The translations under genes were made by a program, and so were the position numbers. From positions 49,600,001 through 49,664,000 of the forward strand of contig NC_043000.1 in NCBI RefSeq assembly GCF_006345805.1: DNA of 64,000 bases, given 5' to 3'. Positions within the stretch are counted from its first letter, which is position 1, and every line of letters starts with the position of its first letter. Origin of the DNA: Octopus sinensis (taxonomy: Eukaryota). This document shows, one piece after another, positions 8,053 to 62,986 of the stretch. A model generated the notes under the pieces. It was not told the origin of the DNA and ran no database searches. It saw nothing but the letters and a program-made list of their open reading frames with translations.

Positions 8053-8446
8053 AAGGGAATATGGCAACTGCTCACTATTGTCGAAGGTGGATTAGCACAA
8101 CTGGTCAACAGCTGCTGTGGAAAAAGTGGTGGAACAAAAAAAGGAGCTAGGGGGTTAGTTTAGGAGTTATGTTATTTGGTTGGGTATGCTGTAAAGCTGA
8201 CAAGAGTTATTTTGAAGTAGGGAAAGTGTATATTATTAATGTGGTGTTCCTCTGGGGATGGGTTGTGTGATATGTGTAGCAGTAACATATGAATAATTTT
8301 TTGGTGGGGTGTATATAGCTGTCTTCATTGGCCATTTTTTCTGTAAAGGATAAAGTCATGGGGGGAAGGGGTTTATGTTTATGCATATATATATGTATAT
8401 GCAAATATATAAATGTAATTACATATATATGCAGACATATATATAA

Positions 8447-8478
<32 letters not shown>

Positions 8479-9939
8479 GCATATATATGCAGATACATGT
8501 ATATATATACATATATGCAGATATATGCAGATGTATATGTATATATGGAAAATGGACGTTAAACGATGATGATGATATACATATATATATGCATATATAT
8601 GTGTATATATGGTATGGTATATGGTAGTGGCATGTGCATATATATATATATATATATATATGCACATGCCACTGTCATATCACTGTTATACCAAATCAGT
8701 GCCACTAACATAGCACTATTATCAACCTCCAAATTGTTTTAGACTAAGTTTGACAGTTTGAAAATTCTTTGACCTAAATCAAGCTAATATTTTTAATATT
8801 TGATTAATAATCTGGAAAACAGTCATCAGAGTGCTGGACGGTCATTATTAATTATGCTTTCTTAGAGACTACTACTGCTGCTGCTACTGTTGCCACTACT
8901 ATTACTACTACTGTTTTTACATCATCAATGACCGGTGAAAATGAATTAGTAGGAGAATTATAAGAGTCAACATTACTTCTTAAGCAGACCAATATTGCAA
9001 TGATTAGTATGTATGTCATATATAGTTGATGATTGGAGAAAGAGGAGGAGGAGCAGGAATACTATAATGGTGGTGGTGGTGGTGGTGGTGGTGATTGGTG
9101 AGGGTTTACAGTATAACATTTCGTAGACACACATATGAATATACATATAAATCTATGTGTAAATATCTCAACAAATGCTCACGTACTTACTGTAAATATA
9201 CATAAAAGTTCTGCCAAAGCCTGTGACTTTGATGTTATTGTGATCACAAGATTGTAGCTTCTGTATTCCCTGCTCTATAATTAAGTATTATAACTGACCA
9301 GTTAGCCATCACGGAACTCAGATGGTTGTTAGCTTTATCATTGATTTCACATTTTGATTTACTGTTCCCGCTCCTTATGTAGTGGCTTTATTCACCGCCC
9401 TTTCATATCATCAGTTCATTAGCAAGAAGTAAGAGCGAATTCAATACTTTATATTCATGAAGAAGTCAACCTTGAGCCAAGCAGTAGTTTTTAAATACAC
9501 ATGTTTGCAAAATGAATTTAAATAGGCCATAAAATTGCAGGCAAGTTTCTGAATCAGGCTCACAACGTTTTCTCTACTTTGGGATTTAAAAGGTGTCAAT
9601 GATATTTTATGAGATTTCAAATTCAAACATTATGCTAACTTTGCTTGGCTTGATTTACAATAGCCTCTTTTATTTAGTATGAGAAACGTCTCCCTGTTGT
9701 GTCTAATGGAAAGCCCATTTGTAGAATTTGAAATGTAGCCTATAATATATTAATCTCTTAGTTGTTAGTGCCTTCCTGATCAATATTATATAAAATTAGC
9801 CCAAATGACTGTCAAAGGTTACCAAGTTATTAGAATTGATAAATAGAAACTATCAATCATGAAACAAAATTAATCACATCCAGCCTCTCCCACCATAGAC
9901 ATATTTTGTATGTTATGATATACATAAACACGTTTTTTC

Positions 9940-14585: not shown

Positions 14586-14790
14586 TATTGGCTTCAAATT
14601 TTAGTACAAGGCCAGCAATTTCAGGGGGTTGAGGTGTAAGTTGATTACATCAACGCCCAGAGTTCCACTAGTCCTTCTTGTATTGACCCCAAAAGGATGA
14701 AAAGTAAAGTAGACCATTGTAGAATTTGAACTCAGAATGTAAAGATGAAATGCCACTAAACATTTTGCCTGGTGAATTAACAATTCTGCC
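14586..14790 (-). mobile_element. SINE family C fragment
   Basis: GACCCCAAAAGGATGAAAAGTAAAGTAGACC...GAATTTGAACTCAGAA is the reverse complement of the central region of 27035-27258. Confidence 0.65.
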
Positions 14791-18640: not shown

Positions 18641-19479
18641 CACTCCCTCCATCAACTCGATATATCTTGTGCAGGTGTGCTGTGTACTACATGTCAAATA
18701 TTGAAATGATTACAGAGCAATGTGAGATTAAGTGTTTTGCTCAAGGACTCAATGCACTTCCTGGTTTGGGAATCAAAACTACAGTCAGACAATCACAATT
18801 GCAACACCCTATCAACTAAGCCATTACAATGATATAGTATATATTATACATTTAAGTAACACACAGATATGCACAAACATGTACATAGATATCACAAACT
18901 ATTATATAGCTATTTTCACAAATTATAAACTGAACAGCAGTGTGTGCATGTATGTTCATCGGTGTGTTCCCATATGTGTGTCTGAGTGTCCATTTGTTTT
19001 CTTCTAGTAACATACATATGGAATTATTTAAGAATCATATGCAGACACAACATACACATACAACATACACATACAACAAAATATGTTTATATACACTGAA
19101 AGCAACTTATGATTTCTTAGTTTATTCTTCTATTTATTTTTACTCTGCCTTTGCATCATAAGCTATTGGAAAAGAGTTGCTATCTTTCAATTGTTCTGTA
19201 ATGAAATTATGAAAAGAAATTGTCACATACTGGGTTAGCAATTATTGAGCAAGATTGTGTGTTACTTTCATATAACAGAAACCCATAATTATGGCTTAGT
19301 CTTGCTGGCTGTTTCTGTGACTTAGCTGATATGAATGACAAAAAAACATTTATATACATGAAATTCTACTATAAAATGATATCTTGTCTTTGGGTTACAC
19401 AAGAGATATTTCTGTTGTCAATAGAAGTAGAGAACACATCAAAAAAAAAAAAAACTAAGACAGATATACCATGTTTGTA

Positions 19480-19605
19480 TGCATATGTGTGTATGTGTGT
19501 GTATTAATATATATGTATGCATAATATATATATATATATTTATACATATATACATATATATTTATATATATATATACATACATATATATATACATATATA
19601 TATGC

Positions 19606-19646
<41 letters not shown>

Positions 19647-19813
19647 TATGTATATATATACACATGTATATATATATTGATATATGTCAAATATATATGC
19701 ATGCATATATATATTAAACATATATGAATATGTACATATATATGTATATATAGAAATATATATATATATATATATACACATATTTAAGTATATATATTGA
19801 TATATATCCCAAA

Positions 19814-19863
<50 letters not shown>

Positions 19864-19880
19864 TATGTGGGTATATGTAT
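19480..19880. repeat. Degenerate (TA)n/(TACA)n microsatellite
   Basis: Direct reading. Confidence 0.95.
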
Positions 19881-20278
19881 ATGACTCAATTATGATATTT
19901 GAGTGCACATTTCAAGAAGACGTTTGTGGCATACGTCATTGTACAAGCATATGTGTTAAAAAAATGAAAAAAAAAAATAATAATAAATAAATAAATGCAA
20001 AAAGAAACAATCTGTATATCTCAACAAAGATCTAAATTTGATGTCAATTTGACAGCAAGCTAATCTTGGGATTCTATTTCTAGTTGGGATGGTTAGTACT
20101 ATTCACTCCTTTATTTTTTCAACATACACACATACAAAAGCACAAACGTATACATAGGTAATAATAGATCACTCTCTCACTTTCTTCATGTGCATGTGTG
20201 AATGTGTGCGTGTAGTGCATGTGTGCGTGTAGTGCATGTGTGTGTGTGTGTATACATATATGTATTAAGAAATAAAGA

Positions 20279-21823: not shown

Positions 21824-21958
21824 CAATGGGCTTCTTTCAGTTTCCCTCAATCAGATCTACTCATAAGGCTTTAGTCAGTCCAAGATACCACTCAGTGGAC
21901 TGAACCTGGAATAATGTGGCTAGGAAGCAAACATCTTAACCACTCAGTCATGCCTGTG
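21824..21958 (-). mobile_element. SINE family A, 5' module
   Basis: GGGCTTCTTTCAGTTTCC...CAGTGGACTGAACC...ACCACTCAGTCATGCCTG. Confidence 0.75.
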
Positions 21959-22443
21959 TATATATATATATTACTATATATATATATATATATATATATA
22001 CATACACACACACATATATATATACATATATATATATGCTCCTTTACACAACATGGGCTCAACTCCCCTTCCCTCTTCATCTGACTCCCCTCCTCTCCTC
22101 TCTTGCCCTGACACCTACTTCCTCTCTTTACTCCTACCCAGCTTCTCCCTTCATTGATACTCCCTCCTTCCACACCCACTCCACACATCTCACTTCCACA
22201 TACCCCACCCTTACCTCCACCTCCACATCCTCGCCGCCAAACCCACACCCCACCCTCACATCCCCACACATCTCACACCACATTACACACCCCCACATCA
22301 CTCCACAAACACTAGCACTGACCACTTCCCAGCACCCCCACACCATCATCCACACACACATACATTAGATGCACACACGCACACATTCACATGTCAAAGT
22401 CATCAGCCCCTATCCCCCCACACACACACTCTCTCATACACTC

Positions 22444-22720
22444 ACGTTTTGGGATCACCAGTACTTTATTATCTCCCCCTTCTTCCTAGCTCTCCTGTCC
22501 AACTGTTTTTTTCCAGCCAGTCACCATGATTGACTGCTAAATCCACACGTTTTCTTTTTTTTCATTCTCTCCTTGTTTATTTCCTCATGTTCCTTTCTGC
22601 TGAAGAGCATAGGCTCGAAACATAAATGACTTTCTCATCTTCCCAAACATCAGGCTAATACACCTGCTTGCTGTTTATACACCTGTCTTTATTTTCTGTT
22701 TTTCTGTAAATTTCAGCTAT
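22444..22720 (+). mobile_element. Penelope-like element terminal remnant carrying a hammerhead-like motif (copy 2)
   Basis: Aligns with 975-1210; CTGCTGAAGAGC-ATAG-GCTCGAAAC at 22597-22621. Confidence 0.5.
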
Positions 22721-22749
22721 ATATATACACATACATAAACTAACATACA

Positions 22750-23215
22750 CACACATGAGTGTGAGTGTGCATGAGAAGGACATGGGATGAGGAAGGACAT
22801 ATAAGTATTATTCATACATCATTGTCAGCTGTCTGTTATAGGGGGATGTTGACTGTCCATTCGGTTCTCTGAACAAATTCCCTTTCGACAGTAAGGTAGT
22901 TGGCACTAATCGCCTCACCCCACCAGACTTCCTCTCTGGGCTTCCATGCCAATTACCAAGGGGTGTGGAAGAGTACAGCAAGCATGGCCTAAAATGAGGC
23001 ATCCTGCAGTAGAAGCTTATTTGCTAGTTAAACCCCACCAACCATTGTCTGATGATACTGATCTTCCACTTGGCCGCAATAAACTTCAAACTGGTCTAGG
23101 ACTCTCCCACCTTGGTTGGTTATCCAACCTTCTACTACTGCCATCTTCACCATATTTCTGGCACAGGAGGCTAAGGGGTTGCTAGCATTTACCCAAGGTG
23201 CCACCCCAGTCCACA
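22750..23215 (-). mobile_element. Probable LINE (RTE-like) 5' UTR and ORF-start fossil
   Basis: GC-richer island. The minus strand ends in a degenerate NIxTYNxRxxM-like segment resembling the first APE endonuclease motif. Weak evidence. Confidence 0.3.
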
Positions 23216-24929
23216 CACAGAAGGGGCTACTTTAACAGCCTGTCATTTATGTAAGTGCTGTACTGTATTGCATACTAAAAATGTATAGGTATGTATTTGA
23301 TAACTCACAATTCACAGTTCATACATTACTAGTGTACATGGCCAAAATACTAAATACTTACTGCCCCAGTCCATCAAGAAGTAAAGTGGTACCATAGGAT
23401 AATATGTCTTGCAGCTTAAAAGGTAACATGTACTATATAATTGATGGATGTTTTCTTACTTAGTAGAACTGAGTGTTAAGTTCTGGTTCAAGACCTTTAA
23501 TCACAGTCAGAATTTCAGATATTACTGCTGTCAGTATGTTGTACTCCTGTGTAAAACATCAAAGTCAACTTGCTCCAGTTTGCATTAGTGAACAATTTCA
23601 TTCCAACTTTATGGTTGAACAGAGAGAGCAGTAATCAATTTCCTTTTTCTTTTTTTCTTTCTTTTTTTTTTTAGTTTTTGACTTTACTCTCTTTCAACTA
23701 TTTACTTTAAACAGAGTTTATTTTTGTAATCTGACAATCAAATTGTCTGTAAATCAGATGTTTCTTTCTGTTGCAAGCTATTCAGTGAGTCAAAGTAAAA
23801 CCTTTTAATCACAGCTCTAAAGAATATGTGATTGAATGGCATATTCTGTTATTAATTAATCTTTGATGTGTATTTGTGTCATGTCTTTTCCAAACATAAA
23901 TTCTATTGCTCTTACAATTCCTTCTTATCTTCTTCCAGCTCAAAGTATCTGATTCTTCAACACGATGATCTTTGTAGCTATTATTGTTGTTGTTGTTCAA
24001 AAGCAGGTCTTTGTGTAAACCCATAATCAAAGACATTCCAGCCATAACCATCTCGTCTTGTAAGAGAGGTATAAATTACTCTGAATTATCTAGTGTGTAC
24101 TTTTCTTTCCAAAGATGGTAGGTTGTGACTTGAGACAAATTTAGGTGTTATCTTTTTTTTTAATATGCATTTTTGTTGCAGGTGGATAACTTCAGTCAGA
24201 CCTTTGAAATCATACTCAGTATATAATGTAGAGCATAATAATATTTTTGTGACTGACCATTATGTCATTATATAAGTGTTGTGCTTACATGTCCAGCTGC
24301 ACCCCCAGTTTCATCTCCCTATCACTTACTTCCATCAGTCTTCTAACTACTACATTATTCTGCTGTTGTATTTAAATGAAAGCAGAACTGCATATATCAT
24401 CATTTCTTTCTGTACTAAGTTAATTCTTCCTCTCTCCTGAACCATTTTGTTTAGCCAGCCAAAACCCTCATTCTTAACATCATCTCTTCCCACACATATT
24501 TTTCATTGATCACACTTTATGTGCTGCCAGTCACCACTTTCTCTCCTTTAGCCATTTCCTATTGCCACCCACTCCTTATACTTACCACCTTCTCATATCT
24601 ACTATTAATCACACCCCACCTTAATATATATACAGTTACAACCACACACACACACTCACATAACACACATACACATATCCTTCTGTAACTACTATTAAAT
24701 TCTAAGATTACTGTCCACATTCCTTGATACTAACATGAATCCATGGTAATAAGTGGCATTGTATATGTTATATATATTGCATATATATATATGTATATTT
24801 CCACATATACACACACACATATATACATACATATACATACACATATAGATATATTATGCATGTATATGTTTGTGTCTATATATATATATATATATATAAT
24901 GTATGTATTTATGTGTATGTATGTATATA

Positions 24930-24966
<37 letters not shown>

Positions 24967-25571
24967 GTATACAGAGAGAGAGGGAGGGAGGATTACATTA
25001 TACAGAACAGCTTACTCTTCAGTCTTCATGTGTCTTTTCCTTTTTGATGGCTTGAATTAACTAGGTAAATTTGATCCGTACAGCCATGCATACTCTGAAT
25101 GCAAAGCATCATTTTTCTTGCTTTTGTTAGAAATTATTCTGAGTTAAGAAATATATTGCATTTGTACATACACCAAAAGTGTATGTAAAAATAGCACAAT
25201 TTTCCTCCTGATTGAATGTATTCAGTTATATGATAAGTTACAGATCAATAAAAGGCACAAGGTTAGTTCAAACCAAGGATTAGTTAACCTCAAGTCCACA
25301 TCACTGGCACAGAGCAAATTTTTTTTTTTTTTCTTTTGTAACACTTCAAACCTGTACATCACCAACAAACAGTGAATAGACGAGAGAAGTAAAATCTTAA
25401 CTACTAGCTGATACTGACACACTTGTACTTTTCCTCCATTTTTTTTTTTTTTTAAAATTTTTATTTCATAGGTTATTGTCTTTTTTCTTCATAACTTGTC
25501 GCTTTAACAGGTTCTGAAATGAAAACATATATTTAAACACACATGCAATATATATATAAATATATATATAT

Positions 25572-25955
25572 AGGCGCAGGAGTGGCTGTGTGGTAAGTAG
25601 CTTGCTAATCAGCCACATGGTTCTGGGTTAAGTCCCACTGCGTGGCATCTTGGGCAAGTGTCTTCTGCTATAGCCCCAGGCCGACCAATGCCTTGTCAGT
25701 GGATTTGGTAGACGGAAACTGAAAGAAGCCTGTCGTATATATGTGTATATATGTGTATGTGTGTGTGTTTGTCCCCTTAGCATTGCTTGACAACTGATGC
25801 TGGTGTGTTTATGTCCCCATAACTTAGCGGTTCAGCAAAAGAGACCGATAGAATAAGTACTGGGCTTACAAAGAATAAGTCCCGGGGTCGATTTGCTCGA
25901 CTTAAGGCGATGCTCCAGCATGGCCGCAGTCAAATGACTGAAACAAGTAAAAGAG
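25572..25955 (+). mobile_element. SINE family A, full length, young
   Basis: Same modules as 17501-17910; inserted in a (TA)n context. Confidence 0.9.
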
Positions 25956-27034: not shown

Positions 27035-27258
27035 GGCAGAAATATTAGCATGCCGGGCGAAATGCTTACCAGTATTTCGTCTGCCACTACATGTTCTGAG
27101 TTCAACTTCCACCACGGTCAACTTTGCTTTTCATCCTTTCGGAGTCGATAAATTAAGTACCAGTTACGCACTGGGGTAGATGTAATTGACTTAATCCCTT
27201 TGTCTGTCCTTGTCTATTCCCTCTATGTTTAGCCCCTTGTGGGCAATAAAAAAATAAG
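27035..27258 (+). mobile_element. SINE family C, near full length
   Basis: GCTGGCAGAA.TATTAGCATGCCGGGCGAAATGC...TTCTGAGTTCAA...TTTCATCCTTTCGGAGTCGATAAATTAAGTACCAG...; A-rich end. The reverse complement lies at 33690-33828. Confidence 0.85.
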
Positions 27259-27583: not shown

Positions 27584-27983
27584 TCTCTTTTACTTGTTTC
27601 AGTCATTTGACTGTGGCCATGCTGGAGCACCACCTGGAGTCAAGCAACTCGACTCAGGACTTATTCTTTGTAAGCTTAGTACTTATTCTATCAGTCTCTT
27701 TTGCCGAACCGCTAAGTTACGGGGGACGTAAACACACCACCATCAGTTCTCAAGTGATGCTGGGGGACAAACACATACACACAAACATATACACACACAT
27801 ACATATATATACATATATACAACGGGCTTCTTTCAGTTTCCGTCTACCAAATCCACTCACAAGGCTTTGGATGGCCTGAGCCTATAGTAGAAGATACTTG
27901 CCCAAGGTGCCACACAGTGGGACTGAACCCAGAACCATGTGGTTGGTAAGCAAGCTACTTACCACACAGCCACTCCTGTGCCT
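27584..27983 (-). mobile_element. SINE family A, full length
   Basis: Reverse complement of all family A modules, from the TCTTTTAC tail to the CCTGTGCCT head. Confidence 0.9.
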
Positions 27984-28167
27984 ACCACACAGCCACACAC
28001 TAGTAAAAACACAACAGTTGTATTGCATTTGATCATGGATCTGGTTGATCAGAGTTTACACATTTTTGTTTGTAATGTCACCACTTACAGTAACTTCACC
28101 TTTTAGATTAGCGATCCTTAAAGTGAATGCAACTGTCTTTTCTGTGGAGGTGGTGAGCAGCTATCTT

Positions 28168-32620: not shown

Positions 32621-32899
32621 AAGAATAGACTGGAAGAAAGTGTACTCGGCACCAATATGGTGAATAATCCAGTTGTTGTTTCTTTTCTGGTACAGAGGTT
32701 TCATGCTGATGGAGATAACCATTTTCTGAAGCAAAATTCATTCAAAACACACATAACACTCTGTCCAGCTGATCTTCAACCAGCTGGTAAAACTGCATTT
32801 CAGTGAAGTGACCAAATCATAGGTGAGCAATTAATTAGTTAGGAAATGACTAAAATTTGTCCTGTTTATAATTATACCATATATTATGTGAATATGAAT

Positions 32900-32953
32900 G
32901 TATGTATACATATACATATCTCAATGTATGTATTCATATATGTGTGCATAAAT

Positions 32954-33023
<70 letters not shown>

Positions 33024-33024
33024 C

Positions 33025-33059
<35 letters not shown>

Positions 33060-33077
33060 CTATATATATATATATAC

Positions 33078-33139
<62 letters not shown>

Positions 33140-33197
33140 CTATATATATATATAGATATATATATATATATATACATATATACATATATATATATAT

Positions 33198-33256
<59 letters not shown>

Positions 33257-33280
33257 ATATATATATACATATATATATAA
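32900..33280. repeat. Long, nearly pure (TA)n array
   Basis: About 380 bp, direct reading. Confidence 0.95.
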
Positions 33281-33689
33281 TGGCCATCCACTCATGACCG
33301 AGGAAGACCATTGCTGACCTTTAGGAACATTGTGTGCTCTAGGACTAACTTATATTTTGCATTTGTGGCTCCATTGGTGGCAAATGAGCCCTGCTCTTGA
33401 CAAGCATACACAACTGCAAACATTGCAAACCAAACTTTCCCCATTCACTACACACATATATATATATACATACATGCATAATTTTGTAAGTGTATGTATA
33501 TTTTCATTAATTCATTTCTTTAATGTCCATTCTTTCTAATGCTAGCATGTTATGGACAGGAAATGGCTGGATGTTTTTCCTGTAGTCAATCATTATCTGT
33601 TTTCCAAGTGAGGTGTATCTTTATTCCACAGTTCTTTGAAAGCACAGAGCGACTGGCTATAACGTCAACATTAGCACCAATTGATTCAA

Positions 33690-33828
33690 GCAATTTGGAA
33701 TAGTTAAACATTAACACAAAGGATGAAAGGCAAAGTAGACCTCGGCAGGATTTGAACTCAGAACCTAATGGCAGACGAAATACGGCTACGCATTTCGCCC
33801 GGCGTGCTAACGTTTCTGCCAGCTTGCC
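33690..33828 (-). mobile_element. SINE family C, 5' part
   Basis: GGATGAAAGGCAAAGTAGACCTCGGCAGGATTTGAACTCAGAAC...CATTTCGCCCGGCGTGCTAACGTTTCTGCCAGC. Confidence 0.8.
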
Positions 33829-36911: not shown

Positions 36912-37065
36912 TGGTTTCAAATTTTGGTACAAGGCCAGGAATTGCAGGAGTTGGGGTAAGTCAATAACCTAATGCTTGACTGGTTACTATTTCATCGACC
37001 CTGAAAGGATGAAAGGCAAAGCTGACCTAGCAGAATTTGAACTCTGAATATAAAGACAGATGAAA
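36912..37065 (-). mobile_element. SINE family C fragment
   Basis: TTTCATCGACCCTGAAAGGATGAAAGGCAAAGCTGACC...GAATTTGAACTC. Confidence 0.65.
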
Positions 37066-37897
37066 AGAAAAAAAATGCAAGCATAACCAGCAATAACTCA
37101 AAGTGACCAATGGTTTATATATGAATAACATAGACAAATACATGTATATCAAATGCTGTACAACAGTTAAGTAGTTTTAACTGTTTAAGTAACAGCTGCT
37201 GTACATTCTAGGGATGCAATGCTGTTTTGCCAAAAACTTCCCTCTTGCCATATAAAAAAATTACTCTAACAACATTTTTTTTTAATCAGCTAAAAGCGAT
37301 TTTTAAAAAATGAGGAGATTCTTAATATCAAAGAACTATGACTCAGAAAGTAAAAGTATGTTTTTTTTTTCCTATGAAATTTACAAAATCAATGTCTCTA
37401 TAGAGAGCAGTGTTTCTAGTGTGATTAGAAGTAAATTGAACCTAATCAGGATCAAAGATATTTGCTTTAACCTGATTGATTCCTAGAACTAACACTATGA
37501 TTTGAGCTTTTACACTGATGCAAGAATTTTTTTACACTTGAAAGATTCTGGCATCAAAATATTTGCAATACAACTCTGCTATAGTAGACGTCATCAGAGA
37601 AGTAGTCAGCAAGTTATGCTGATGTAAAGAAACTGGTTCGAAACTACAATACTCTTTTACTTTTACGGAAATGTACTTGCATAGCAAGTGACTTGATCTG
37701 AGATCGTGTGCTGGAACGAAAACAATTGCAGCATGGAAGGTGTTTATAAGCCATTTAAGAAACACACAAAACCATTAGATTCACTTCAACGTTTAAATTT
37801 GATTTGTCAAAATGTTTTCGTTTTTTGAGACCGTGACCTGTTCACTGACAAAGCTTTATTTTTCATTATCATTTATTAATGCCCATAGTTCCACATT

Positions 37898-39850: not shown

Positions 39851-42797
39851 CTCATCCTTATTTAAATATGATGTGCTATGTAGCAGATTACTAGAAAGTC
39901 TTATTAAAGTTCAATGGTTGATCTCTTTGAGCTTAAACACTTGAAAATAAAACTGAAATAGCCACATACTTTAATAAGTGTTTTCATATATACTTCAGAT
40001 CTAGTTGGATCTTGAATAAATGTTTTCATACATACTTGCAGATCCAGATGGCAATTCTTAGAGAGTATGTTTGTTATGAAAATATTGAGTTGGAGCTGAG
40101 TTCTTAGGTGAAAGACTGTGAAAAACTGTGATTAATCAATTGATATGACTAAAGAATTACAAAAGAACAATCCATCCCATCCCAGTAATAGATGAGCTTC
40201 TAAATGAGAGAACTGAATTTAAATAGTCCAAAGAATTTAAATAAACATGCTATCTTAGCCTCACAATGAAAAGTAAAATACAGGTTTTATCATGTGGGTA
40301 AAAATATGGGACTGATGTTCTTGGGATCCTCATCTATAGACAAGTATACTTTCTCTGATGAAGGTCTAAGAAGTATTAACAACTAATCAGATTAATTTTC
40401 ACAACAAGGCTAAAATTGCATATTTATTAAAAACAAAAAAAGTATATTTTACATTACATTTTAAAGTGTTTAAAAATGCTGTGTATTACACTATGAATTA
40501 AATACATAATCCTTGCTGACATAGTATGCACTGCTATGCAAATTACTCTGGTCATTTGAGATGGCTTCAAATTTCTATGAATTAATTAGAGATATAAGCT
40601 ACTACTCACTCGTTTGACAGAATAATGGATGTTTTTCTCTCTCAAAGAAAGACTTAAGAAAGCTTGAAACTAGTCAGAACAAACACATTTATTTTTTTGT
40701 TATCTCAGAGCGATAAAACCTATAATGTAATCATTTTGCTTATGGTGAGATTACAATCATATTATAATTTTTTGAAACTCAAAATAACTTATATTTCAAA
40801 TTGTCAAAAAATGCACTGTATTGCATAATGAATTTACACATCTAAAGATGTTCCATTATTAGTGCCAGTTCACTGCCTTTTGTTAAGTTAATATTGATTT
40901 CTGTCAGAGGCAAAAGTTCTCAAATTTTATGAGCTTGGTATAGTTGATTAAATTGCTCAAGTACTTGACTGGCAATTTTATCAAATTAATCTCAGATGGC
41001 TGACAGGCTTTGAATTCAGACTGCAAAGGGTCATAAAATTTTGTCCAATGCTGTGATGATTTTACCAATCTGCCCCAATTAAAACTGAATTCATACATTA
41101 GAACAAAGCTATGAATTTGTAGGTGAGGATCAATTTAGTTCAATTAGTATTTAATCAACCCTGGTGAGATAAAATACAATGCCAGCTACTAACAAGATTT
41201 GAACTCAAAACATAGAAGGGTGAAGCTAAATAGTGGAATATAATTAGTAAGATACTCTATCATTTCTGTCAAGTATTTTAGAATCCATTTAGACATTCAT
41301 TTAAAACTCAAATGCCATGTAGAGTAGAGAAAATTGCTATCTGTTTCTCATAAAAATCTCAAGCAATTGTAGATTCTTTCACTTTTTTCTTCTACTTTAG
41401 ACTGAAATTCTTCTTCCTGCCTTGATGAAGTATTTAAACAATTGTTTGTTTGTGTCAGCAAATAATGCATCAATAAATTACATGTTGAGAATGTTACATT
41501 CAATCATATTCAATAAGCTGTCTTGAGATTGTCAAAGATTGCTGTGCAAACTTTCACAAGCTAAATATTGACAAGAGAATAATGTTTAAAAATCTTATAA
41601 TGTCTTATAAGTGACACTGTCATATCCCTTGTTTCTATTTCTAACCTTTATATGAATATATTTTATACAAATCTTCCTATTAAGGACTTGACTCGATTAA
41701 CCCTTGACTTGACATTATTTTCCAACCAGAGATTTCCTGACAAGGTCATTTCTTATTATATTTTAACATAATGAAATACCACTTTTTTCCCTAGCTGATT
41801 GCTGTCTCACTTACACAGATGTGTTCAAACACCAAAACAAACAGTTACTTACTGTCCAGTTACTCCTCCCTTAACACAATATATGTCACCAGTACTTAGC
41901 AATGCTTTGATAGGAATATAGGGTTTCTAAAGAAATGTATATCACTTTATAAAGATGACCAAACAATCATAATCTCAGAACTGGATACTTCATAATATTT
42001 TGTTTCCATCTTTCATAGTTTTCAGTTCAAAACCAGATGCAGTTAATTTGGCATTTTGTCATTCTAGATTCAATAATACAAGTACCAGTAAGTGATTTGG
42101 GATACGAAAACTAAAACAAAAACAAAAAAAACACCAATCTGCTATGCTATCTCGTCTTCCAAAACTAACCTTGTTCCTGAGAGAGTAATCAGTATTCATT
42201 CAAATATTCATTCAAATGCAAAAAGAACATCACAAGAGAAACAACTTGATAAAATGTTGTATGCTACAAAGTTCTCAATCTTTCAATTGGCTATAATGAG
42301 AAAAGAAGTATAACTAGAAAATAATGTTTATCATTCTCATTAGATGCCATATTCTCTTGAAATTTCCTAAAACAAATAACATATCTATATCCGAATGGTT
42401 GTGCTGAGAGTGAATAGTGAGTAAGTATTTGGTGCAGTCTACATATCAATGCAAGTTAGACAGTCATCAGCTGGGGAAAAATTTTTAAAAAATGGTATTT
42501 TGCTCTGTTCCTTATGTTTCAATGTAGTAAGAAAATGATCTTGTCAGAAAATCTGCAGTACGAAAATAATGTTGCATCAAATGTATTAGGGATGATGCAT
42601 ATACTGAAGCAGCTTCATCAGAGTCTTTTTTTCGTTTTCAGTCTTGTAGATATAAATCTGTCTAAGATATACCACATGGTCATGTAGTAAGGAGTTTGCT
42701 TTGCAGCCATGTGATTTTGGGCTTAGTTCCGCTGTGTTGGCACTAAAGCCTTGACACAATGAATTAGGTAATTCAAAGCTGAGAGAAAGCTGTGTAA

Positions 42798-47048: not shown

Positions 47049-47441
47049 AAGAGATATGCACATACACATATATACACACACTCATACATATACATATATA
47101 CATATATACACATACATATGTATATACATATAAATATATATAAATATGTAAATGCATATACATATGTATATATATATATATTTATATATATACATATGTA
47201 TATACATATATATATAAATATATACACATATATATAAATATGTGTATACATATATATATGCATATCTGTGTATATATATATATATATATGTATATACACG
47301 TATATAATGTAGATATACATATTCATATATATTCATATATATATATATACACACAAGCAAACACATATATACACATATATGTACATATGCATATACATAG
47401 ATATACACATGTATATATACATATATATGAATATAAATATA

Positions 47442-47476
<35 letters not shown>

Positions 47477-47580
47477 GTGTGTACATATATATATATATGT
47501 ATGTGTGTGAGAGAGAGAGAGAGAGTGTGTGTGTATGTGAGCATAAATATATATAAATAGATGTAAATATATGTATGTGT
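46955..47580. repeat. Degenerate (TA)n/(TACA)n/(GA)n microsatellite block
   Basis: Direct reading; source of the 205-aa ORF. Confidence 0.95.
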
Positions 47581-48240
47581 ATATCATTTGCCAATGTACA
47601 CTGGCAAAAGATACACACATCACTGAGAAAATCAATACAACCAGTGCATTCAAACAAAAATATCTTGCCGTATTTATTCCGCCTCAGCTGTGCAGACACT
47701 TCCTTGCCATTCTTACCATAGGAAATGCAATGAACCAGTGATTGCCCCTATGGAAAGTTATAACTAACGACGCTATTGTTCACTATATGCATGATACAAA
47801 AATGCAAAATAAATGAATAAAATATGCAGAAGCTTTGTCATTATCACATGTTGTTTTATGAATTGATAGATGAGATCTGAGAGGATAGATAACCAAATCA
47901 ACAGAGTAACAGACAAAGTGAAAAAGTAGGTGGTCAATCGATATCTCACTGGTAACACAATGTTACTTTCTTGCCCAGAGTACTTAGTTCTTAAATGGTA
48001 TGGGCTACCTATCTGTAAATAGGTACCACAAAGACGTAACAATTTACTAAAATATGTAGTAGCACTATTATAAAATTAGCATGTGTTTCGTAAGCTTTCA
48101 GAACAGACAAACTTTTACTAAGAATGTAATTCGCTAATACCAACATGTCTGGATTTGTATACACTAAATGGAGGGGAAATATTTGGTGATAGAACTATGA
48201 TACAATGTCTTGAAGAACTGATCTGTTGTATGTGTTGTTG

Positions 48241-54394: not shown

Positions 54395-54920
54395 AACAAG
54401 ATCTAAATATTAAACTAGCACCATAAAAAAATACGAGATGGGAGGAACCCTCTGCCCCCTGCTTCCTTCTAAATAAACAGCCAAATATCATCATCTTGAC
54501 ACCAACAACATCAACAAAATCCAAACAAGATATAAATAAATATTAAATAGCACCATGAAAATGGTATTGGAGATGGGAACTCCAACAACACCACCATGAC
54601 CACCACCGAGTAAACAACAAAAAAAAAAACAACCAAAAGTATCTTGACACTGCCACCACCACCACCAACAACAACAACATCAAAATCCAAACAAAATATA
54701 AATATTTAACTAACACCATGAAAAGGAAGTGCAGGCAGAGAGGGAGAGAGTGACAGAGAAAGAAAGAAAAACTCCCCTATCCCCCATATCTTAAACAAAT
54801 AAGTAAAACAACCAAAATTTTTTTTTGACACCACCACCACCACCACCACCACACCACCACCACCACCAACACCACCACCACCAGCAACAACAATAACAAG
54901 ATCCATACCATTTGAAAAAG
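54395..54920. repeat. Degenerate minisatellite with (ACC)n/(AAC)n cores
   Basis: Recurring GACACC...AAC...AA(G/A)ATC(C/T)A...TAAATATT...A(G/A)CACCAT(G/A)AAAA units. Confidence 0.5.
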
Positions 54921-54946
54921 AAGAAAGAAATGAAATGAAAATAAAC

Positions 54947-54990
<44 letters not shown>

Positions 54991-56607
54991 TATATATATA
55001 CATATACATATGTATACATACATATATAAATATGTATATATAAATAAAAACATACATATATGTATATATATATATATACATATATATGTATGTATGTATG
55101 TATATATATATATATATAAACATACATATATATGTATATTCATATGTGTATATATGCATATATTTATAAGTATATATATAATTATGTGTGTGTGTATGCG
55201 TATGTGTATATATATATATATATATATATAGAATGTATGTACACATGTGCGATATCATCCTGAAGTAAGTCATTTCTTGTGAGATACCATCATAGAAATT
55301 TTCAAACATACATTTCTAATAAAAGTAACTCTCAGCATAAATTTAGCATAAATTTCTACTAAAACTCACCGATTCGCAAGACCAACTTTCACAGCAAAGA
55401 ATTAATAACACTATCTGAAGAAACATGTCAAATAGAGCATGTAGAAAAAGTGTTTGGATAGAATTTGATTTATTTGTGTGTGTATGTATGTATATATGTG
55501 TATGTGTGTATGCAGGTGTAAGCTTGTGTGATATAGTAAGTGTGTATATGTAAGGTCCATGATAAATCAGTGTATGACTTTATGATTGGGTTCTTCCGTG
55601 TATTTATGTGTATACACACATACATGTATCTGTACTTGTGTGTGTGTGTGTCTTGTGCATGTATGTGCAGGTGTGTCTTGTGTATGTATGTGCATAGATC
55701 TGATTCAATGCCTCTGCATTTGCACCTGTCTTTATTTGTATATGCATGTATTTGAGTGTGTCTGTGTTAATTCATATGCGTATGCTTTATTGCGTGCATA
55801 AAAGATAGTGAGAAATATAGGGAGACAATGTTCATATGGTGATGCAAAATGTTTCCTTATCCTTATGTGCATGTGTGTGTGTCTGTGTCTGTGAGTGTAT
55901 GTGTGTGTGTGTGTGTGTGTGTGGTAATCAAAGCTGAATATGATATACATGTCTCTGGTTTGGTGTTTTATTACTGTTGTTCTTTTATTTCCATAGCCAA
56001 ATATGTCAGGCTAAAAATAGAAACTAAATCCAAAGCATTAATACAATATCTATTTACATTGAGATATTGTACAGATAAAAAAATCACAAGCAAACATCTC
56101 TCTCTCTCACTCTCTCAGCTCTTTCTGCTAGTTTTAGCAACTAGATGATAGGGTTGTTATTGGTTTTGTTTATTCCATACTTTTTAAATTGTATTCCTTA
56201 AACTCAAAAGAAAAGATAAAAAAGGCTAACAAATAGAATTTAAGCTCATGTGTCATGAAAAAGACAGCAAACATATGTAGCTGTATCTTCCACAAGAATA
56301 AAAGGTGAGAGACATAGTAACAGTCACAGAGTATCTAGGTGAATAAAACAGGCAACAGAGTGACAGAATCATTGAAGTGTTGGACAAAATGGCTCTGAGA
56401 TATTTGTTCCAACACTTAACATTCTGACTTTGAATCCCACAAAGGCCAACTTTACATTTCATCCTTCTGGTGACAATAAAATAAAGCAACCCTCCAGGTA
56501 GTGAATTGACAGAATCATTTATAGCATTGAACAAAATATCTTGTGGCTCTTTACATTGTGAGTTCAAGTCTTGTTGAGGGTTAATTATGTATTTCATCTT
56601 TCTTGGG

Positions 56608-57275
56608 CAGGGGTCAGCAAACTTCTGATATCATTGATCCCTTTGTGGAATCTTTGATAACTTACTGACCTAGATCATGTAAATTTCTAAAATGAAATTA
56701 AAAATGTAGAATTAAGAAAAAATTTCTTGATTTAAAAGCAATAATTCTATCATTCTTTTGTGTCATTACTACTTTTTAATAAGAAATATTTTAAGAAATT
56801 CAACAAAATTGCAAAGTGAAATTGATAAAGAACAATAAAAATTCAGTCGTATATTATATTGATACAGTCAGAATACTTAATGTGAAACATCTGTTCAGTA
56901 AATATTAGTTATTGCATCAATATTTGGTTGGAAATCAGTGAGTTTTAGTTTTAAATTACCATCCTCATGTAGATTCATTCCATTTCTCTCTGTTAAAAGT
57001 GAATTTGCATGGCTAAAAATCACTTAACCACACAGAAACTTGGAAACATAAAATAAAAGGATTTAACTGCTGGACTAAGCTTGAGGTACTTATTTTTGGT
57101 ATTTCTATTGCTTCAGTAATTTACTCAGACTTTTGCTTTTAAATAAAAATTCAGCTTTAAGATCCATACACATATCAAAGCGCTCATCTTGTAACTTGGA
57201 CTCAATGTTTGCATCTTCTATTTCCAAGTCAAACAGCTAGTTGACATCATACACTGATTTATCATAAACCTTACA
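56608..57275 (-). pseudogene. hAT (Buster/Charlie-type) transposon 3' end: transposase C-terminal fossil and TIR
   Basis: Minus strand with frameshifts: LFDLEIEDANIESKLQDERFDMCMDLKAEFLFKSKSLSK / KYLKLSPAVKSFYFMFPSF / FSHANSLLTERNGMNLHEDGNLKLKLTDFQPNIDAITNIY*TDVSH* (stop 56879-56877). This resembles the hAT dimerisation region ending in SH*. TIR-like CAGGGGTCAGCAAAC at 56608. Confidence 0.75.
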
Positions 57276-57963
57276 TGGATTGATTCTGTACTTAATAAAC
57301 CCTATAACAGGATTGACAAAGTGGGCCATATTGACCCTAGTGGAGTCTATGTGGATGTCCCAGGATTTCATAAATACTTAAAACAGTTTTGAGCATTAGA
57401 GGTGCTGAATTATCAGCAAACTGTTTTTTTTTCCAGCATGAATAAGATTCTATTGGGTTGTCTGGAAATTTTGTGACGATTTTTAAAGGAAAGGAAAAGG
57501 TCAATAAATACTTGCCATTACATTTTTAATCAACCACATATGAAGCGTTTTGTTGCACAATACGTCTCCATTGTTCCTTTAACTTGAAAATACCCTCTTC
57601 CCAGAATTGAAGTAGTGTCATGGCAAAAAATTCAAGGTATCTTTTTACGTCATCCAAGGAATTGAAATTTTTACCATTAAGACTATTCTGCGGTTCATAT
57701 GTGGTTGATTAAAAAAGGTAATGGCAAGTATTTATTGACCTTTTCCTTTCCTTTAAAAATCGTCACAAAATTTCCAGACAACCCAATAGAATCTTATTCA
57801 TGCTGGAAAAAAAAACAGTTTGCTGATAATTCAGCACCTCTAATGCTCAAAACTGTTTTAAGTATTTATGAAATCCTGGGACATCCACATAGACTCCACT
57901 AGGGTCAATATGGCCCACTTTGTCAATCCTGTTATAGGGTTTATTAAATACAGAATCAATCCA
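57276..57963. repeat. Long inverted repeat (fold-back): arms 57276-57544 and 57694-57963, 149-bp spacer
   Basis: By base-by-base reading the arms are reverse complements with about two substitutions and one indel. Confidence 0.95.
57451..57788 (-). mobile_element. mariner transposon 3' end, with the terminal ~92 bp present twice in inverted orientation
   Basis: 57693-57526 reads PQNSLNGKNFNSLDDVKRYLEFFAMTLLQFWEEGIFKLKEQWRRIVQQNASYVVD*, a typical mariner transposase C-terminus. ITR-like TA|TTGGGTTGTCTGGAAATTTTGTGACGATTT at 57451, with its reverse complement ending at 57788. Confidence 0.85.
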
Positions 57964-59494
57964 GAGTGGTATACTGATTAAATCATTAGAACATAGGGCA
58001 AAATACTGTGCAGTTAGTATTTGTGCTGGTTCTTTATATTGAGTTTAAATCTTGCTGAGGTCAATTTTACCAGTCATCCTTCTGGGGTCTACAAAATAAA
58101 GTATCAATTCAGTGTAGTAGGGTTAACAGAATCATTAGAACACAGGACAAAATTCTTTGTGGTATTTGTTTTGTTCTTTATGTTCTGAGTTCAAATCTTC
58201 TGGTTGATGAAACGTTTGCCAGTATACTGAAGGTAAATGTTTAGGTAGATGTTTCTGAAGACAGGAACCGAACTCAGCACTATAGAGCAATGAAACTTAG
58301 AGTGGAATTTTCAGTGCTCTCAGTGTTTACAGCAGCAAAATATACCAGCTGCATAGACATAGATGGAAACAATTTGTAAATTACATATCAAGACTAATGC
58401 ATTAAGAGGAAGATATGAACAGCTGAACACTTGGTTGCTTGTATTGAAATACTTTATCAAATTAGACGTCCATGCTTATATATTGTACTCTCTTTTGCTT
58501 GTTCTATTAAATAAGACACCGAAGATCAATCAGACAGTTTGGCAGGATTACTTTGCTCTTTCTAGAGTAACCTTCCCAGGACCCTATCTTGTCCTATGAT
58601 ACAGTACCTCACATTTTATGATTTTTATTTAAAAGTCTTTCAAGTTATGTACCAAACAACAGCTTATCTCTTTCGTTAACATATTTCTGTTAAACCACAC
58701 TGCCTTTGTTTCAATTAATATTTGAAAACAACGAAAAATTTAATAAAATAGTTTAATAAAATAGTTTTGCCAGTGTTTGAAACATAAATTAACATGAAAT
58801 TTAAACAGGAGGTTTTAAGTGAGATCGCTTTAAAACAGAAAGCTTCCATCATAGAATCAGTAGTGATCACAAGCATACTAGTATCAGAGGGGTTTTATTA
58901 AATCCCTGAAAATTCTTGATTATTTTGAAAATTAATTGAAATATATGAGCAGTGTATTTCACTAAAAAATGATAAAAGGTTAAAGCATGATTATTTTATC
59001 AAAAGAAAAACACTGCATATTAAAATTTATTGATGCAATTTTTTGGTAATAGTTATCGATAACCCTGTTTCCTATAGAAATCTTGGGCTTAAAATTAGAG
59101 CATACGCTACAAAATCAATCAATCCTGATGTTTATTTATGATAGATAATTTTGTGCAGTGTTCTTTCTCTCCTTCTTTCTTTCACTTCTTTTCAGTTTAA
59201 ACCAAGAATAAAATTCCTTTCATTTCTATAAAATAAGTATTAGAAATATACTGGGGTCAGAATTATAAACAATAGTTGTGTTTCGAGTAGAGTTTGACAT
59301 ACGTAATATAATTTAGTTGTAAAACTGACATTATTTACACGGTCAGTAAACAATATCTCTATCTAGAATGTGTTTAAAATCTAAAAGTAACAAACAAGAG
59401 AGATAAATCCAATAAAATCAATTATTTTTGGAAATTTTCAGAAAATAAAGACAATGCAGATGAGAATGGATCTTGTCCAACCAAAATAAAGCAC

Positions 59495-61674: not shown

Positions 61675-62084
61675 TTAGACACAAGCTATCTCTGATCAAA
61701 CAAACCTATGATCAAAAATTTTCTGGACACCACTTTTCTGCCTGTTTCATATATTTAAAACTACCTTGTTCAATAAGCTCTCTTATATTTTTCTTTTTTA
61801 TGATGGTAGTGTGTAAATTTGAAAGGTAGATTTCTCTGCTCTTTCTTGCTAGAAAGAGCAGACAAATTTTGACAGATCATCAATTTTGAGGGGAATGATT
61901 TAGTCAATAAATTGAACCCCAGTAGATTACAGGGGACTTAATTTCATTGAACCCAGAGGAATGAAAAGTATAATTAACTTTGATAAGATTTGAACTCAGA
62001 GCATGAGGAGCTGGATCAAATGCTACAAGACATTATTTTCTGATGCTCTAACAATATTATTAAAACAATAATAATGGTTTCAGA

Positions 62085-62282
62085 TTTTTGCAAAAGGCCA
62101 GCAGTTTCAGTGAAGGTGATAAGTCGATTACATCAACCCTAGTGCTTAACTGGTACTCATTTTATCAACCCCAAAAAGATGGATAGCAAAGTCGCTCTCG
62201 GTGAAATTTGAACTCAGAACACATAGTCAGAAAAAATGTCTCTAAGCATTTTGTCTGGTACAATAATGATTCTGCCAGCTCT
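62085..62282 (-). mobile_element. SINE family C, diverged
   Basis: AAGTCGATTACATCAACCCTAGTGCTTAACTGGTACT...GAAATTTGAACTCAGAAC...TCTGCCAGCT. Confidence 0.7.
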
Positions 62283-62986
62283 TCAAAACAACAACAACAA
62301 CAACAACAATAATAATAATAATAATAATTTTTATTTGGCATAAAGCCAATTTTCTTGTAAGGAATGGTTGTAATCAATTGAGTTCTTTATAGCTTAATAC
62401 CGGTACTTAATTTATCAATACCAGATTGATGTAAGACAGGCAAATCCATACTCAGTGGAATTTGAACTCAAAACAGCAAGTTATTGAAATAGAAACAATA
62501 AAGCCTCCACTCCATCATGAATCTAATTCCATGGTCACAAGTGTACTTATTAGATTGCAAAGGGCTTTTGGTCCTCTGTTTGATATTCATAACATTTCTT
62601 TCGTGCAAGAGTATATCGATCAACAGTGTAACAATGGCATGCTTAAAGATGACAGACTTGTAGCTTCAGGATTAAAACAAAAACAATAACAGAAAGAAGA
62701 AAAACGAAGGAAAAACGAAACAGAGCAATCCTATATCAGCTCTCTACTAAATAAAGTATATTTAGGAAAAAAAAATATCAAAACAACAATAACAATAATA
62801 ACATCAAGATCTAAACATATTTTATTACAAAGACAACTATGCTTGAATTTTGAATAACAATTCACCCAGGAGATACCATAATAAAATCTTGACAACAATA
62901 TATATATATATGTATGTGTATATATATATATATATGTATGTGTACTTGTGAGTGTATATATATATATATTTGTGTGTGTATATAAT

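What the first reader, a model, noticed from the sequence alone, without database searches (positions are those of the whole stretch)
57451..57788. A MITE apparently caught at birth: mariner unit with two 3' ends made by fold-back duplication
Seen: 57453-57786 is flanked by TA on both sides and has ~92-bp inverted ends, both being the post-stop 3' end and ITR of a mariner. The spacer is the last codons of the transposase, cut at PQNSL. The inverted identity runs 175 bp beyond each TA into flanking DNA, so the second end was created in place rather than by insertion of a ready-made element. The inner junction has CG-N-TTCATAT microhomology. The unit lies upstream of, or inside, an older hAT fossil. 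Established: how MITEs acquire long symmetric ends is unresolved, and Mos1 constructs with the 3' ITR at both ends transpose better than wild type. Inference: this locus shows a one-step route from a mariner end to a potentially mobilisable 334-bp symmetric element.
Basis: partly seen in the sequence, partly recalled or inferred. Interest (0 to 1): 0.72.

Follow-up and report, generated by a model that had tools for sequence, protein, structure and literature searches.

The report
Inverted duplication spanning a mariner end
A 688-base stretch of an animal-like genome is a real, fairly recent inverted duplication that happens to include the tail of a dead mariner transposon, so it carries two facing transposon ends, but nothing shows that it has ever moved as a mini-transposon.

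Summary
Arms 57276-57547 and 57691-57963 (272/273 nt, four differences) flank a 143-nt spacer. Each arm carries a TA, a 26-nt terminal repeat, the post-stop tail and the last codons of a mariner transposase, plus 175 nt of flanking DNA. That flank is a unit of a SINE-like tandem array.

Three points need correcting:
- The transposase remnant is contiguous with the left arm, but the SINE array is contiguous with the right arm. There are therefore two novel junctions, J1 (57275/6) and J2 (57690/1). The simplest one-step fold-back does not give this topology. It needs two template switches, or a fold-back plus a spacer flip, or a fold-back plus capture of the other end in a SINE.
- The "CG-N-TTCATAT microhomology" is just the inner end of the arm with one substitution. 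Provable microhomology is at most 1-2 nt.
- No hAT signal was found.

Derived changes lie in both arms, so the structure is young but not newborn. The window holds one copy only, no other mariner piece and no cognate transposase. The closest protein fragments are at most 64% identical.

A route to MITEs with both ends taken from one transposon end has already been proposed (Goblin, from Ozma). My verdict is an ordinary repair or replication-type inverted duplication with an accidental proto-MITE architecture. Mobility is untested.

The parts
57276..57547 (.). Left arm of the palindrome. It holds 175 nt of SINE-like flank (unit u0), a TA, the mariner 3' ITR, the post-stop tail, the stop codon and the last 6 codons, all in minus (mariner) sense.
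   Evidence: contiguous in reading frame with the spacer and in register with relative P0001 through the stop, tail and ITR
57548..57690 (-). Spacer: 143 nt, about 47 codons of the mariner transposase C-terminus (QNSLNGKNF...RRIVQQN), coding on the minus strand and continuous with the left arm only.
57691..57963 (.). Right arm: the same 272 nt in plus (mariner) sense. Its outer part is SINE unit u0, which continues in phase into unit u1 of the right flank.
57453..57478 (+). Mariner 3'-type inverted terminal repeat, left copy, preceded by TA at 57451-57452.
   Evidence: 2 exact matches, 0.00 expected; similarity to P0001 ends at 57448
57761..57786 (-). Mariner 3'-type inverted terminal repeat, right copy, followed by TA at 57787-57788.
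57275..57276 (.). Junction J1, where the left flank meets the outer end of the left arm. Microhomology is at most 1 nt (T). A near-palindromic 11-mer, TGATTTA(A)TCA, lies 12-22 nt outside both outer boundaries.
   Evidence: no SINE hit in the left flank 57100-57275 down to E = 50
57690..57691 (.). Junction J2, where the spacer (the Q codon of ..LQNSL..) meets the inner end of the right arm. The chimeric codon CCG (Pro) stands where relatives have Leu.
57976..58122 (-). SINE-like unit u1 (model positions 3-135, E = 2e-22). It abuts unit u0, which forms the outer part of the right arm.
58126..58219 (-). SINE-like unit u2 (model positions 67-138), tandem with u1 in the same phase.
57247..57276 (+). 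Left-flank 30-mer TCATACACTGATTTATCATAAACCTTACAT. It has a 28/30 twin at 55548-55577 (minus strand), and the similarity stops exactly at J1.

Best explanation
This is a genuine, fairly young inverted duplication of the fold-back or template-switch type. It was made by host DNA repair or replication at a break inside, or next to, a degenerate mariner copy that had inserted at a TA beside a SINE-like tandem array.

**Event.** A 415-nt block S now lies in inverted orientation (57276-57690) immediately left of the last 272 nt of the same block (57691-57963). S consists of the last ~47 codons of the transposase, the stop codon, the tail, the 3' ITR, the TA and 175 nt of SINE flank. The rest of the mariner is gone.

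**Junctions.** Two novel junctions were created. J1 joins unrelated left-flank DNA to the SINE end of the inverted copy. J2 joins the Q codon of ..LQNSL.. to the codons ..N-G-S-Y.. near the stop.

**Favoured route** (inferred):
1. A 3' end coming from the left switched onto the opposite strand at the edge of SINE unit u0.
2. It copied back through the TA and the mariner 3' end into the coding region.
3. It then switched again, over 143 nt, using at most 1-2 nt of microhomology, onto the normal template.

Two routes give the same product: a fold-back at the right-hand end followed by a flip of the spacer through recombination between the arms, or a fold-back at the left-hand end followed by SINE-guided capture of the other end.

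**Consequence.** The pair of perfectly inverted 3'-type ITRs, each next to a TA, is an accidental by-product. The 334-bp unit has the architecture of a mariner MITE but is a single, apparently immobile copy.
For: **Shown.**
- Palindrome geometry and identity.
- Mariner identity of the spacer and tail: Mos1 residues 295-343 and SETMAR, and 131 mariner C-termini at up to 64% identity.
- A relative's read-through ORF stays similar through the stop, tail and ITR down to 57448. The element terminus at the TA is therefore real.
- Coding continuity holds only with the left arm.
- SINE continuity on the right. Unit u1 (E = 2e-22) ends at about 57976, and u0 starts at about 57973, in the same phase as the u2-to-u1 join. 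The arm boundary at 57963 falls about 10 nt inside u0. At least 7 family copies run through the equivalent position.
- The left flank gives no SINE hit even at E = 50. Its similarity to the mirror flank is not significant, with 59 of 300 shuffles scoring as well.
- No target-site duplication or other element-like terminus at the outer boundaries.

**Supporting literature.**
- Fold-back synthesis primed at microhomology, with the other end captured by end joining, and template-switch inversions at breaks (PMC11724301).
- Fold-back inverted duplications with spacers (PMC3907307).
- Template switching at inverted microhomology giving a MITE both subterminal regions from one transposon end (PMC3814204).
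Against: - The junctions cannot be checked against raw reads or an independent assembly. Three exact-ORF look-ups, the last crossing J1, found nothing.
- The polarity is not proven. The SINE phase on the right could also arise if a newly made right arm annealed to a homeologous SINE unit on the other broken end.
- The u0 match to the SINE model is weak (E = 1.3).
- Microhomology at J2 cannot be measured without the parent mariner sequence.
- Derived states are spread over both arms, so they do not identify the newly synthesised arm. The left arm is derived at 57291 and 57545. The right arm carries a +1 nt change near 57715.
Confidence: 0.68

Rival explanations
1. **Left arm native.** The mariner lay in minus orientation with the left arm and left flank as the original DNA.
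1. A double-strand break fell at the ..L|QNSL.. codons.
2. The 3' end folded back on its own strand near the stop codon.
3. It copied the tail, ITR, TA and SINE flank, making the right arm.
4. The new strand was captured by the other broken end through annealing of its SINE sequence to a homeologous SINE unit there. That would explain the in-phase SINE join at 57963/4.

For: - Coding continuity of the spacer with the left arm.
- If the left arm once carried the conserved Gly codon, the sequence at J2 is reproduced with 1 nt of microhomology and no synthesis error.
- A hybrid mechanism of fold-back synthesis at one end and capture of the other end is documented (PMC11724301).
- A lone 5'-truncated SINE starting at model position ~10 is plausible.
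Against: - It needs annealing between SINE units that are only about 70% alike. Otherwise the in-phase, right-orientation join is a coincidence, which I estimate at about 2%.
- Unit u0 shares the derived 'ATTGAT' motif with u1, not with standard family copies. This fits u0 being native to the right-hand array.
- The left flank shows no detectable SINE.
Confidence: 0.22
2. **Artefact.** The palindrome is a fold-back chimeric long read, or a template-switch chimera from whole-genome amplification, that was carried into the consensus.
For: - The architecture (an inverted copy, a deletion and tiny microhomology) is the signature of polymerase template-switch chimeras. This rests on my own knowledge.
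- No independent copy of the locus could be retrieved.
Against: - The contig runs through the palindrome into different, non-palindromic sequence on both sides.
- The arms differ at two substitutions plus an adjacent indel and mismatch, with derived states in both arms. A single-molecule fold-back polished with the same reads should give identical arms.
Confidence: 0.08
3. **Ready-made MITE.** A symmetric 334-bp mariner MITE from a multicopy family inserted at the central TA of an already existing spacer-less palindrome of SINE sequence. Alternatively, this locus is the master copy of such a family.
For: - The unit has perfect inverted ITRs, TA on both sides and MITE size.
- Mini-mariners of this kind can transpose in vitro (PMC2642840).
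Against: - No second copy of the ITR or of any part of the unit in 64 kb, and none in the metagenome collection.
- It requires a 175-nt perfect palindrome without a spacer and an insertion exactly at its centre.
- One inverted duplication with the coding remnant as the loop explains everything in a single event.
Confidence: 0.03

Closest known systems
Goblin MITE family derived from the Tc1/mariner element Ozma in Aedes aegypti (Yang et al. 2013, PMC3814204)
   Same: Both subterminal regions derive from the same (right/3') end of the parent element in inverted orientation. The internal junction lies between sites that are inverted on the parent. The proposed cause is template switching during repair synthesis.
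   Different: - Goblin is a multicopy family with proper element boundaries and 6-bp microhomology plus a 1-nt scar.
- Here there is a single copy, and the inverted copy runs 175 nt beyond the element end into flanking SINE DNA.
- Provable microhomology is at most 1-2 nt, and no parent element is available.
Fold-back or templated inverted duplications at DNA breaks and stalled forks (PMC11724301, PMC3907307, PMC7467729)
   Same: Inverted arms separated by a unique spacer, tiny microhomology at the inner junction, the other end joined without homology, and an accompanying deletion.
   Different: - The yeast break-site events are mostly 5-34 bp, and the human ones are kilobases to megabases. This one has 272-nt arms.
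- The spacer orientation relative to the native flank does not fit the simplest fold-back. It needs a second switch, a flip, or homeologous capture.
MADE1 (from Hsmar1) and other palindromic mariner MITEs; pseudo-Mos1 donors with two 3' ITRs (PMC1784062, PMC2642840)
   Same: A short non-autonomous unit bounded by two identical mariner ITRs and TA, palindromic over most of its length. Two 3'-type ends form the configuration used as an efficient Mos1 donor.
   Different: - MADE1 has thousands of copies and almost no internal sequence.
- This unit is single-copy and keeps 143 nt of transposase coding sequence.
- It has no known transposase, and its transposition is untested.

Membership tests
mariner element (Tc1/mariner superfamily) | Transposase with the DD34D catalytic domain | tested here: not met
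   Only the last ~54 residues are present, equivalent to Mos1 residues 295-343. tblastn with 131 relatives finds no other mariner piece in the window. Pfam gives no hit.
mariner element (Tc1/mariner superfamily) | Terminal inverted repeats of about 28-30 bp abutting a TA target duplication | tested here: met
   A 26-nt ITR sits next to a TA at 57451-57478 and again at 57761-57788. A relative's read-through ORF stays similar up to the terminus. Both copies are the 3'-type end, and no 5' end was found.
MITE (mariner-derived / Stowaway-like) | Small size with terminal inverted repeats | tested here: met
   The unit is 334 bp. Its arms are 95/96 nt and identical over the outer ~67 nt.
MITE (mariner-derived / Stowaway-like) | A TA target-site duplication that marks an insertion | tested here: inconclusive
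   TA is present on both sides. Identity continues 175 nt beyond each TA, so each TA is simply part of the duplicated block and is not evidence of insertion.
MITE (mariner-derived / Stowaway-like) | Multiple homogeneous copies at different sites | tested here: not met
   There is one copy in the 64-kb window and no hit in the metagenome collection. The rest of the source genome could not be searched.
MITE (mariner-derived / Stowaway-like) | A cognate autonomous transposase in the genome | not testable with these tools
   None is present in the window. The word-indexed protein search found nothing. The best matches in the representative library are fragments at no more than 64% identity.
Simple fold-back inverted duplication (one end folds back, other end joined) | The spacer and one arm are natively contiguous with the same outer flank | tested here: not met
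   The spacer is contiguous with the left arm, while native flank continuity is on the right arm. The structure fits only with an extra step.
Simple fold-back inverted duplication (one end folds back, other end joined) | Microhomology at the inner junction | tested here: inconclusive
   The arms share sequence up to ..CG, then diverge. Relatives have a Leu codon before Q, so at most 1-2 nt can be shared.
   There is no Pfam hit in the translated frames scanned around the palindrome, in 56.3-57.4 kb on the left and 57.7-59.7 kb on the right. There is no hAT or Hermes match in the PDB. A motif-level resemblance..VIFSHANSLLTER.., at 56895-57023 (minus strand) was seen by eye only.

The most novel reading that the evidence does not exclude
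This locus would be the actual progenitor of a symmetric mariner MITE family. A host repair or replication inverted duplication that spans one transposon end plus its flank would then be a general, transposase-independent way to create palindromic MITEs with two optimal 3'-type ends. The unit 57453-57786 would have been, or could still be, mobilised by a cognate transposase elsewhere in the genome.
Probability: 0.06. Interest if true: 0.7.

Novelty: new member of a known kind. Interest (0 to 1): 0.33.

Why it matters
The locus is a clean single example of how ordinary break repair or template switching can place two identical transposon ends in inverted orientation, each next to a TA. That architecture is what a mariner transposase needs, and two 3'-type ends work well for Mos1. 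The locus is an in-situ illustration of a route to palindromic MITEs that has so far only been inferred from finished families such as Goblin.

Here the duplication overshoots the element end, which points to a host process, not transposase-linked gap repair. Without copies elsewhere, a cognate transposase or an excision test, it remains an anecdote. It does not settle how MITEs arise.

Tried and rejected
**Searches that found nothing.**
- The word-indexed protein search with the 55-aa C-terminus found no candidate.
- Pfam gave nothing on the 57-aa peptide.
- Exact-product look-ups of three window ORFs found nothing on record: one in the right arm, one in the spacer, and one crossing J1. Independent confirmation of the junctions was therefore not possible.
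- An exact scan of the metagenome contig collection for the ITR gave 0 hits.
- Source names for the closest protein relatives were sought. Most are unnamed fragments from metagenome assemblies, and one more distant relative is from an ant. The organism was not identified. The SINE looks cephalopod-like to me from memory only.

**Claims tested and not supported.**
- hAT context. Pfam scans of translated frames on both sides and a PDB search gave nothing.
- A palindrome extending beyond the arms. The left flank against the mirror of the right flank scores no better than 59 of 300 shuffles. The 15/22 match just outside the arms comes from a near-palindromic 11-mer. The left-flank 30-mer has a much better twin elsewhere (28/30).

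**Explanations considered and rejected.**
- A TE insertion splitting a larger palindrome. No inverted high-identity copy of 57964-58200 exists anywhere in the window.
- An old palindrome kept uniform by gene conversion. The flanks are not detectably homologous.

**Attempt that gave no answer.**
- Using derived versus ancestral states to name the newly made arm. Derived changes occur in both arms, so there is no verdict.

Full report
**1. What is there**

The window is AT-rich (about 32% G+C). It is full of (TA/CA)n microsatellites and SINE-like repeats, so it looks like non-coding DNA of an animal genome.

At 57276-57963 lies a 688-bp palindrome.
- The arms are 57276-57547 and 57691-57963. They are 272/273 nt long and 98.5% identical, with one 1-nt indel.
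- The arms are separated by a 143-nt spacer, 57548-57690.
- It is the longest and by far the best inverted repeat in the 64 kb.
- The sequence TTGGGTTGTCTGGAAATTTTGTGACG occurs exactly twice, at 57453 (+) and 57786 (-). None is expected by chance.
- TA lies just outside each copy.
- The 334-nt unit between the TAs folds as single-stranded DNA into an almost complete hairpin, -114 kcal/mol, z = -21.

**2. The mariner part is real**

The minus-strand frame from 57699 to 57527 reads YEPQNSLNGKNFNSLDDVKRYLEFFAMTLLQFWEEGIFKLKEQWRRIVQQNASYVVD*.

Evidence that this is a mariner C-terminus:
- It aligns to residues 295-343 of the 345-residue Mos1 transposase, and to the SETMAR (Hsmar1) transposase domain.
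- A HMMER search of 1.84 billion representative proteins gave 131 hits, all mariner C-termini, with a best identity of 64%.
- The relatives read ..DYHLFRSLQNSLNGKNFSSLEDCKRHLEQFFAQKDKKFWEDGIMKLPEKWQKVVEQNGEYVVQ.

One relative, P0001, is an ORF that reads on through the stop codon, tail and ITR. It stays similar to the left arm, in a single frame, down to 57448. The element therefore ends at the TA.

tblastn with all 131 relatives finds no other mariner fragment in the window. The word-indexed protein search found no close relative. The copy is also somewhat decayed. It has a one-codon deletion and the stretch AMTLLQ where relatives have AQKDKK.

**3. What the 175-nt 'flank' is**

The DNA outside each TA is a degenerate unit (u0) of a SINE-like family. 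I rebuilt this family from copies elsewhere in the window, with the palindrome masked. This gave a 140-nt consensus and 16 confident copies.

To the right of the palindrome, two further units follow in tandem on the minus strand:
- u1 covers model positions 3-135 at 58120-57981 (E = 2e-22).
- u2 covers model positions 67-138 at 58199-58127.

Unit u0 begins at about 57973. It abuts the end of u1 in the same phase as u1 abuts u2. The outer boundary of the right arm (57963/4) falls about 10 nt inside u0.

At least seven family copies run straight through the equivalent position. Units u0 and u1 also share a derived ATTGAT motif that standard copies lack.

The left flank differs.
- It gives no SINE hit even at E = 50.
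- It is no more similar to the mirror image of the right flank than shuffled sequence, with 59 of 300 shuffles scoring as well.
- Its last 30 nt have a 28/30 twin at 55548-55577, and that similarity stops exactly at 57276.

**4. Consequence for the mechanism**

Two continuities point in opposite directions.
- Mariner continuity (coding, then stop, tail and ITR) holds for the spacer plus the left arm.
- SINE continuity (u0 into u1 and u2) holds for the right arm plus the right flank.

The locus therefore reads: left flank | inverted copy of block S | last 272 nt of S | right flank. S is 415 nt: the coding remnant, tail, ITR, TA and u0. The two novel junctions are J1 (57275/6) and J2 (57690/1).

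The textbook fold-back has one broken end snap back and copy itself, and the new arm is then end-joined to the other end (PMC11724301). It predicts that the spacer is natively attached to the arm that also keeps its native outer flank. That is not what is seen.

Three routes give the observed product.
- **(a) Two template switches in one repair or replication episode.** A 3' end from the left jumps onto the opposite strand at the edge of u0. It copies back through the TA and the mariner end into the coding region. It then jumps 143 nt onto the normal template.
- **(b) A fold-back at the right-hand end**, followed by inversion of the spacer through recombination between the arms.
- **(c) A fold-back at a break in a minus-oriented mariner** with the left side native. 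The new arm is captured by the other end through annealing of its SINE sequence to a homeologous unit.

I favour (a) or (b) together at roughly 2:1 over (c). Route (c) needs annealing between SINE units only about 70% alike, or else an in-phase coincidence that I estimate at about 2%. I cannot exclude it.

All three routes are host-repair events. None needs the transposase. Because the copy overshoots the element end by 175 nt, gap repair confined to the element, as drawn for Goblin in PMC3814204, is not sufficient.

**5. The junctions**

At J2 the arms share sequence up to ..CATATGAA[C/G]CG and then diverge.

Relatives have Leu before the Q of QNSL. The observed CCG (Pro) is therefore a chimeric codon. 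Real microhomology can be at most 1-2 nt, and only the parent sequence could settle it.

At J1 a single T is shared. A near-palindromic 11-mer, TGATTTA(A)TCA, lies 12-22 nt outside both outer boundaries. It may have helped an inverted template choice, or it may be chance.

**6. Age**

The arms differ at four positions.

| Position | State | Judged against |
|---|---|---|
| 57291 | the left arm has C; three SINE units and the right arm have T, so the left arm is derived | SINE units |
| 57545 | the left arm gives Ala; the right arm gives the Gly conserved in the NG.Y motif of relatives, so the left arm is derived | mariner relatives |
| about 57715 | the right arm has an extra base and an adjacent mismatch that break the register kept by the left arm and by P0001, so the right arm is derived | relative P0001 |

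Changes in both arms argue for real divergence after the event, about 0.4-1.5%. They argue against a single-molecule artefact, and they do not fit 'caught at birth'. Three of the four differences lie in the inner 33 nt, next to J2. This is compatible with error-prone synthesis near a switch but does not prove it.

**7. Is it a MITE?**

The architecture fits. The unit is 334 bp, has perfect inverted ITRs of the 3' type, and has TA on each side.

- Pseudo-Mos1 donors with two 3' ITRs are used because the wild-type ITR pair is suboptimal.
- Mini-Mos1 elements of 80-122 bp transpose in vitro.
- The palindromic organisation of mariner MITEs is described as unexplained (PMC2642840).

The defining features of a MITE family are not shown.
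- There is one copy in the window and none in the metagenome collection.
- No cognate transposase was found.
- Each TA is part of the duplicated block, so it is not an insertion footprint.

The concept itself has been published. Goblin has both subterminal regions from the right end of Ozma, joined at inverted microhomology. Its authors suggest that long-TIR and hairpin MITEs may arise this way (PMC3814204).

**8. Other claims and limits**

- I found no support for a hAT fossil. Pfam scans of translated frames on both sides and a PDB search were empty.
- I could not test the junctions against reads or another assembly.
- I could not search the rest of the source genome.

**9. Verdict**

The best explanation is a young inverted duplication of the fold-back or template-switch type that accidentally created a proto-MITE architecture (confidence about 0.68).

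| Alternative | Confidence |
|---|---|
| Reverse polarity (left arm native) | about 0.2 |
| Assembly or amplification chimera | about 0.08 |
| Ready-made or mobilised MITE | about 0.03 |

Interest is modest. It is a neat illustrative case of a known class of event and of an already proposed route to symmetric MITEs, without evidence of mobility.

Noticed in passing
window 56361-56621, 57976-58219, 61917-62276, 40957-41270, 14655-14790, 27035-27176, 33697-33820, 36967-37085, 4598-4721, 41961-42101, 62385-62502: A SINE-like family has a 140-nt consensus: CCCCAGTGCTTTACTGGTACTTATTTTATTGACCCCAGAAGGATGAAAGGCAAAGTTGACCTCGGTAGGATTTGAACTCAGAACATAAAGTTAGACGAAATATTACAAAGCATTTTGTCCGGTGCTCTAATGATTCTGCC. 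There are 16 confident copies in 64 kb, and several are arranged as head-to-tail dimers or trimers in which the 3' end of one unit abuts the 5' end of the next. From memory it resembles cephalopod SINEs. The organism was not established.
   Followed up: partly
window 25571-25764 and 27791-27984: This is the second-best inverted repeat in the window. The arms are 194 nt and 90% complementary, with 2026 nt between them. It could be a DNA transposon with long terminal repeats or a pair of inverted repeat copies.
   Followed up: no
window 57247-57276 and 55548-55577 (minus strand): A 30-mer, TCATACACTGATTTATCAT(AA/GG)ACCTTACAT, is present twice (28/30) with unrelated sequence on both sides. One copy ends exactly at junction J1. 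The other is embedded in CA-rich microsatellite. Its nature is unknown.
   Followed up: partly
window 22001-24000: There is a local composition anomaly: G+C is 0.40 against about 0.32 elsewhere, and the GC skew is strongly negative (-0.32). It lies next to a G-rich low-complexity ORF at 21892-22269.
   Followed up: no
window 8207-8665, 19455-19889, 32884-33297, 47082-47699, 54706-55309: Long imperfect (TA/CA/TATG)n microsatellite arrays produce every ORF above 120 aa in the window, with 'IYIYIY' translations. No credible protein-coding exon was seen.
   Followed up: no
proteins P0001, P0003 and P0132-P0133 (not in the window): The closest protein relatives of the mariner remnant are short unnamed ORFs from metagenome assemblies (ENA, JGI). 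P0001 reads through the stop codon, tail and ITR of its element. It is therefore a miscalled ORF over a mariner 3' end, not a real protein.
   Followed up: partly
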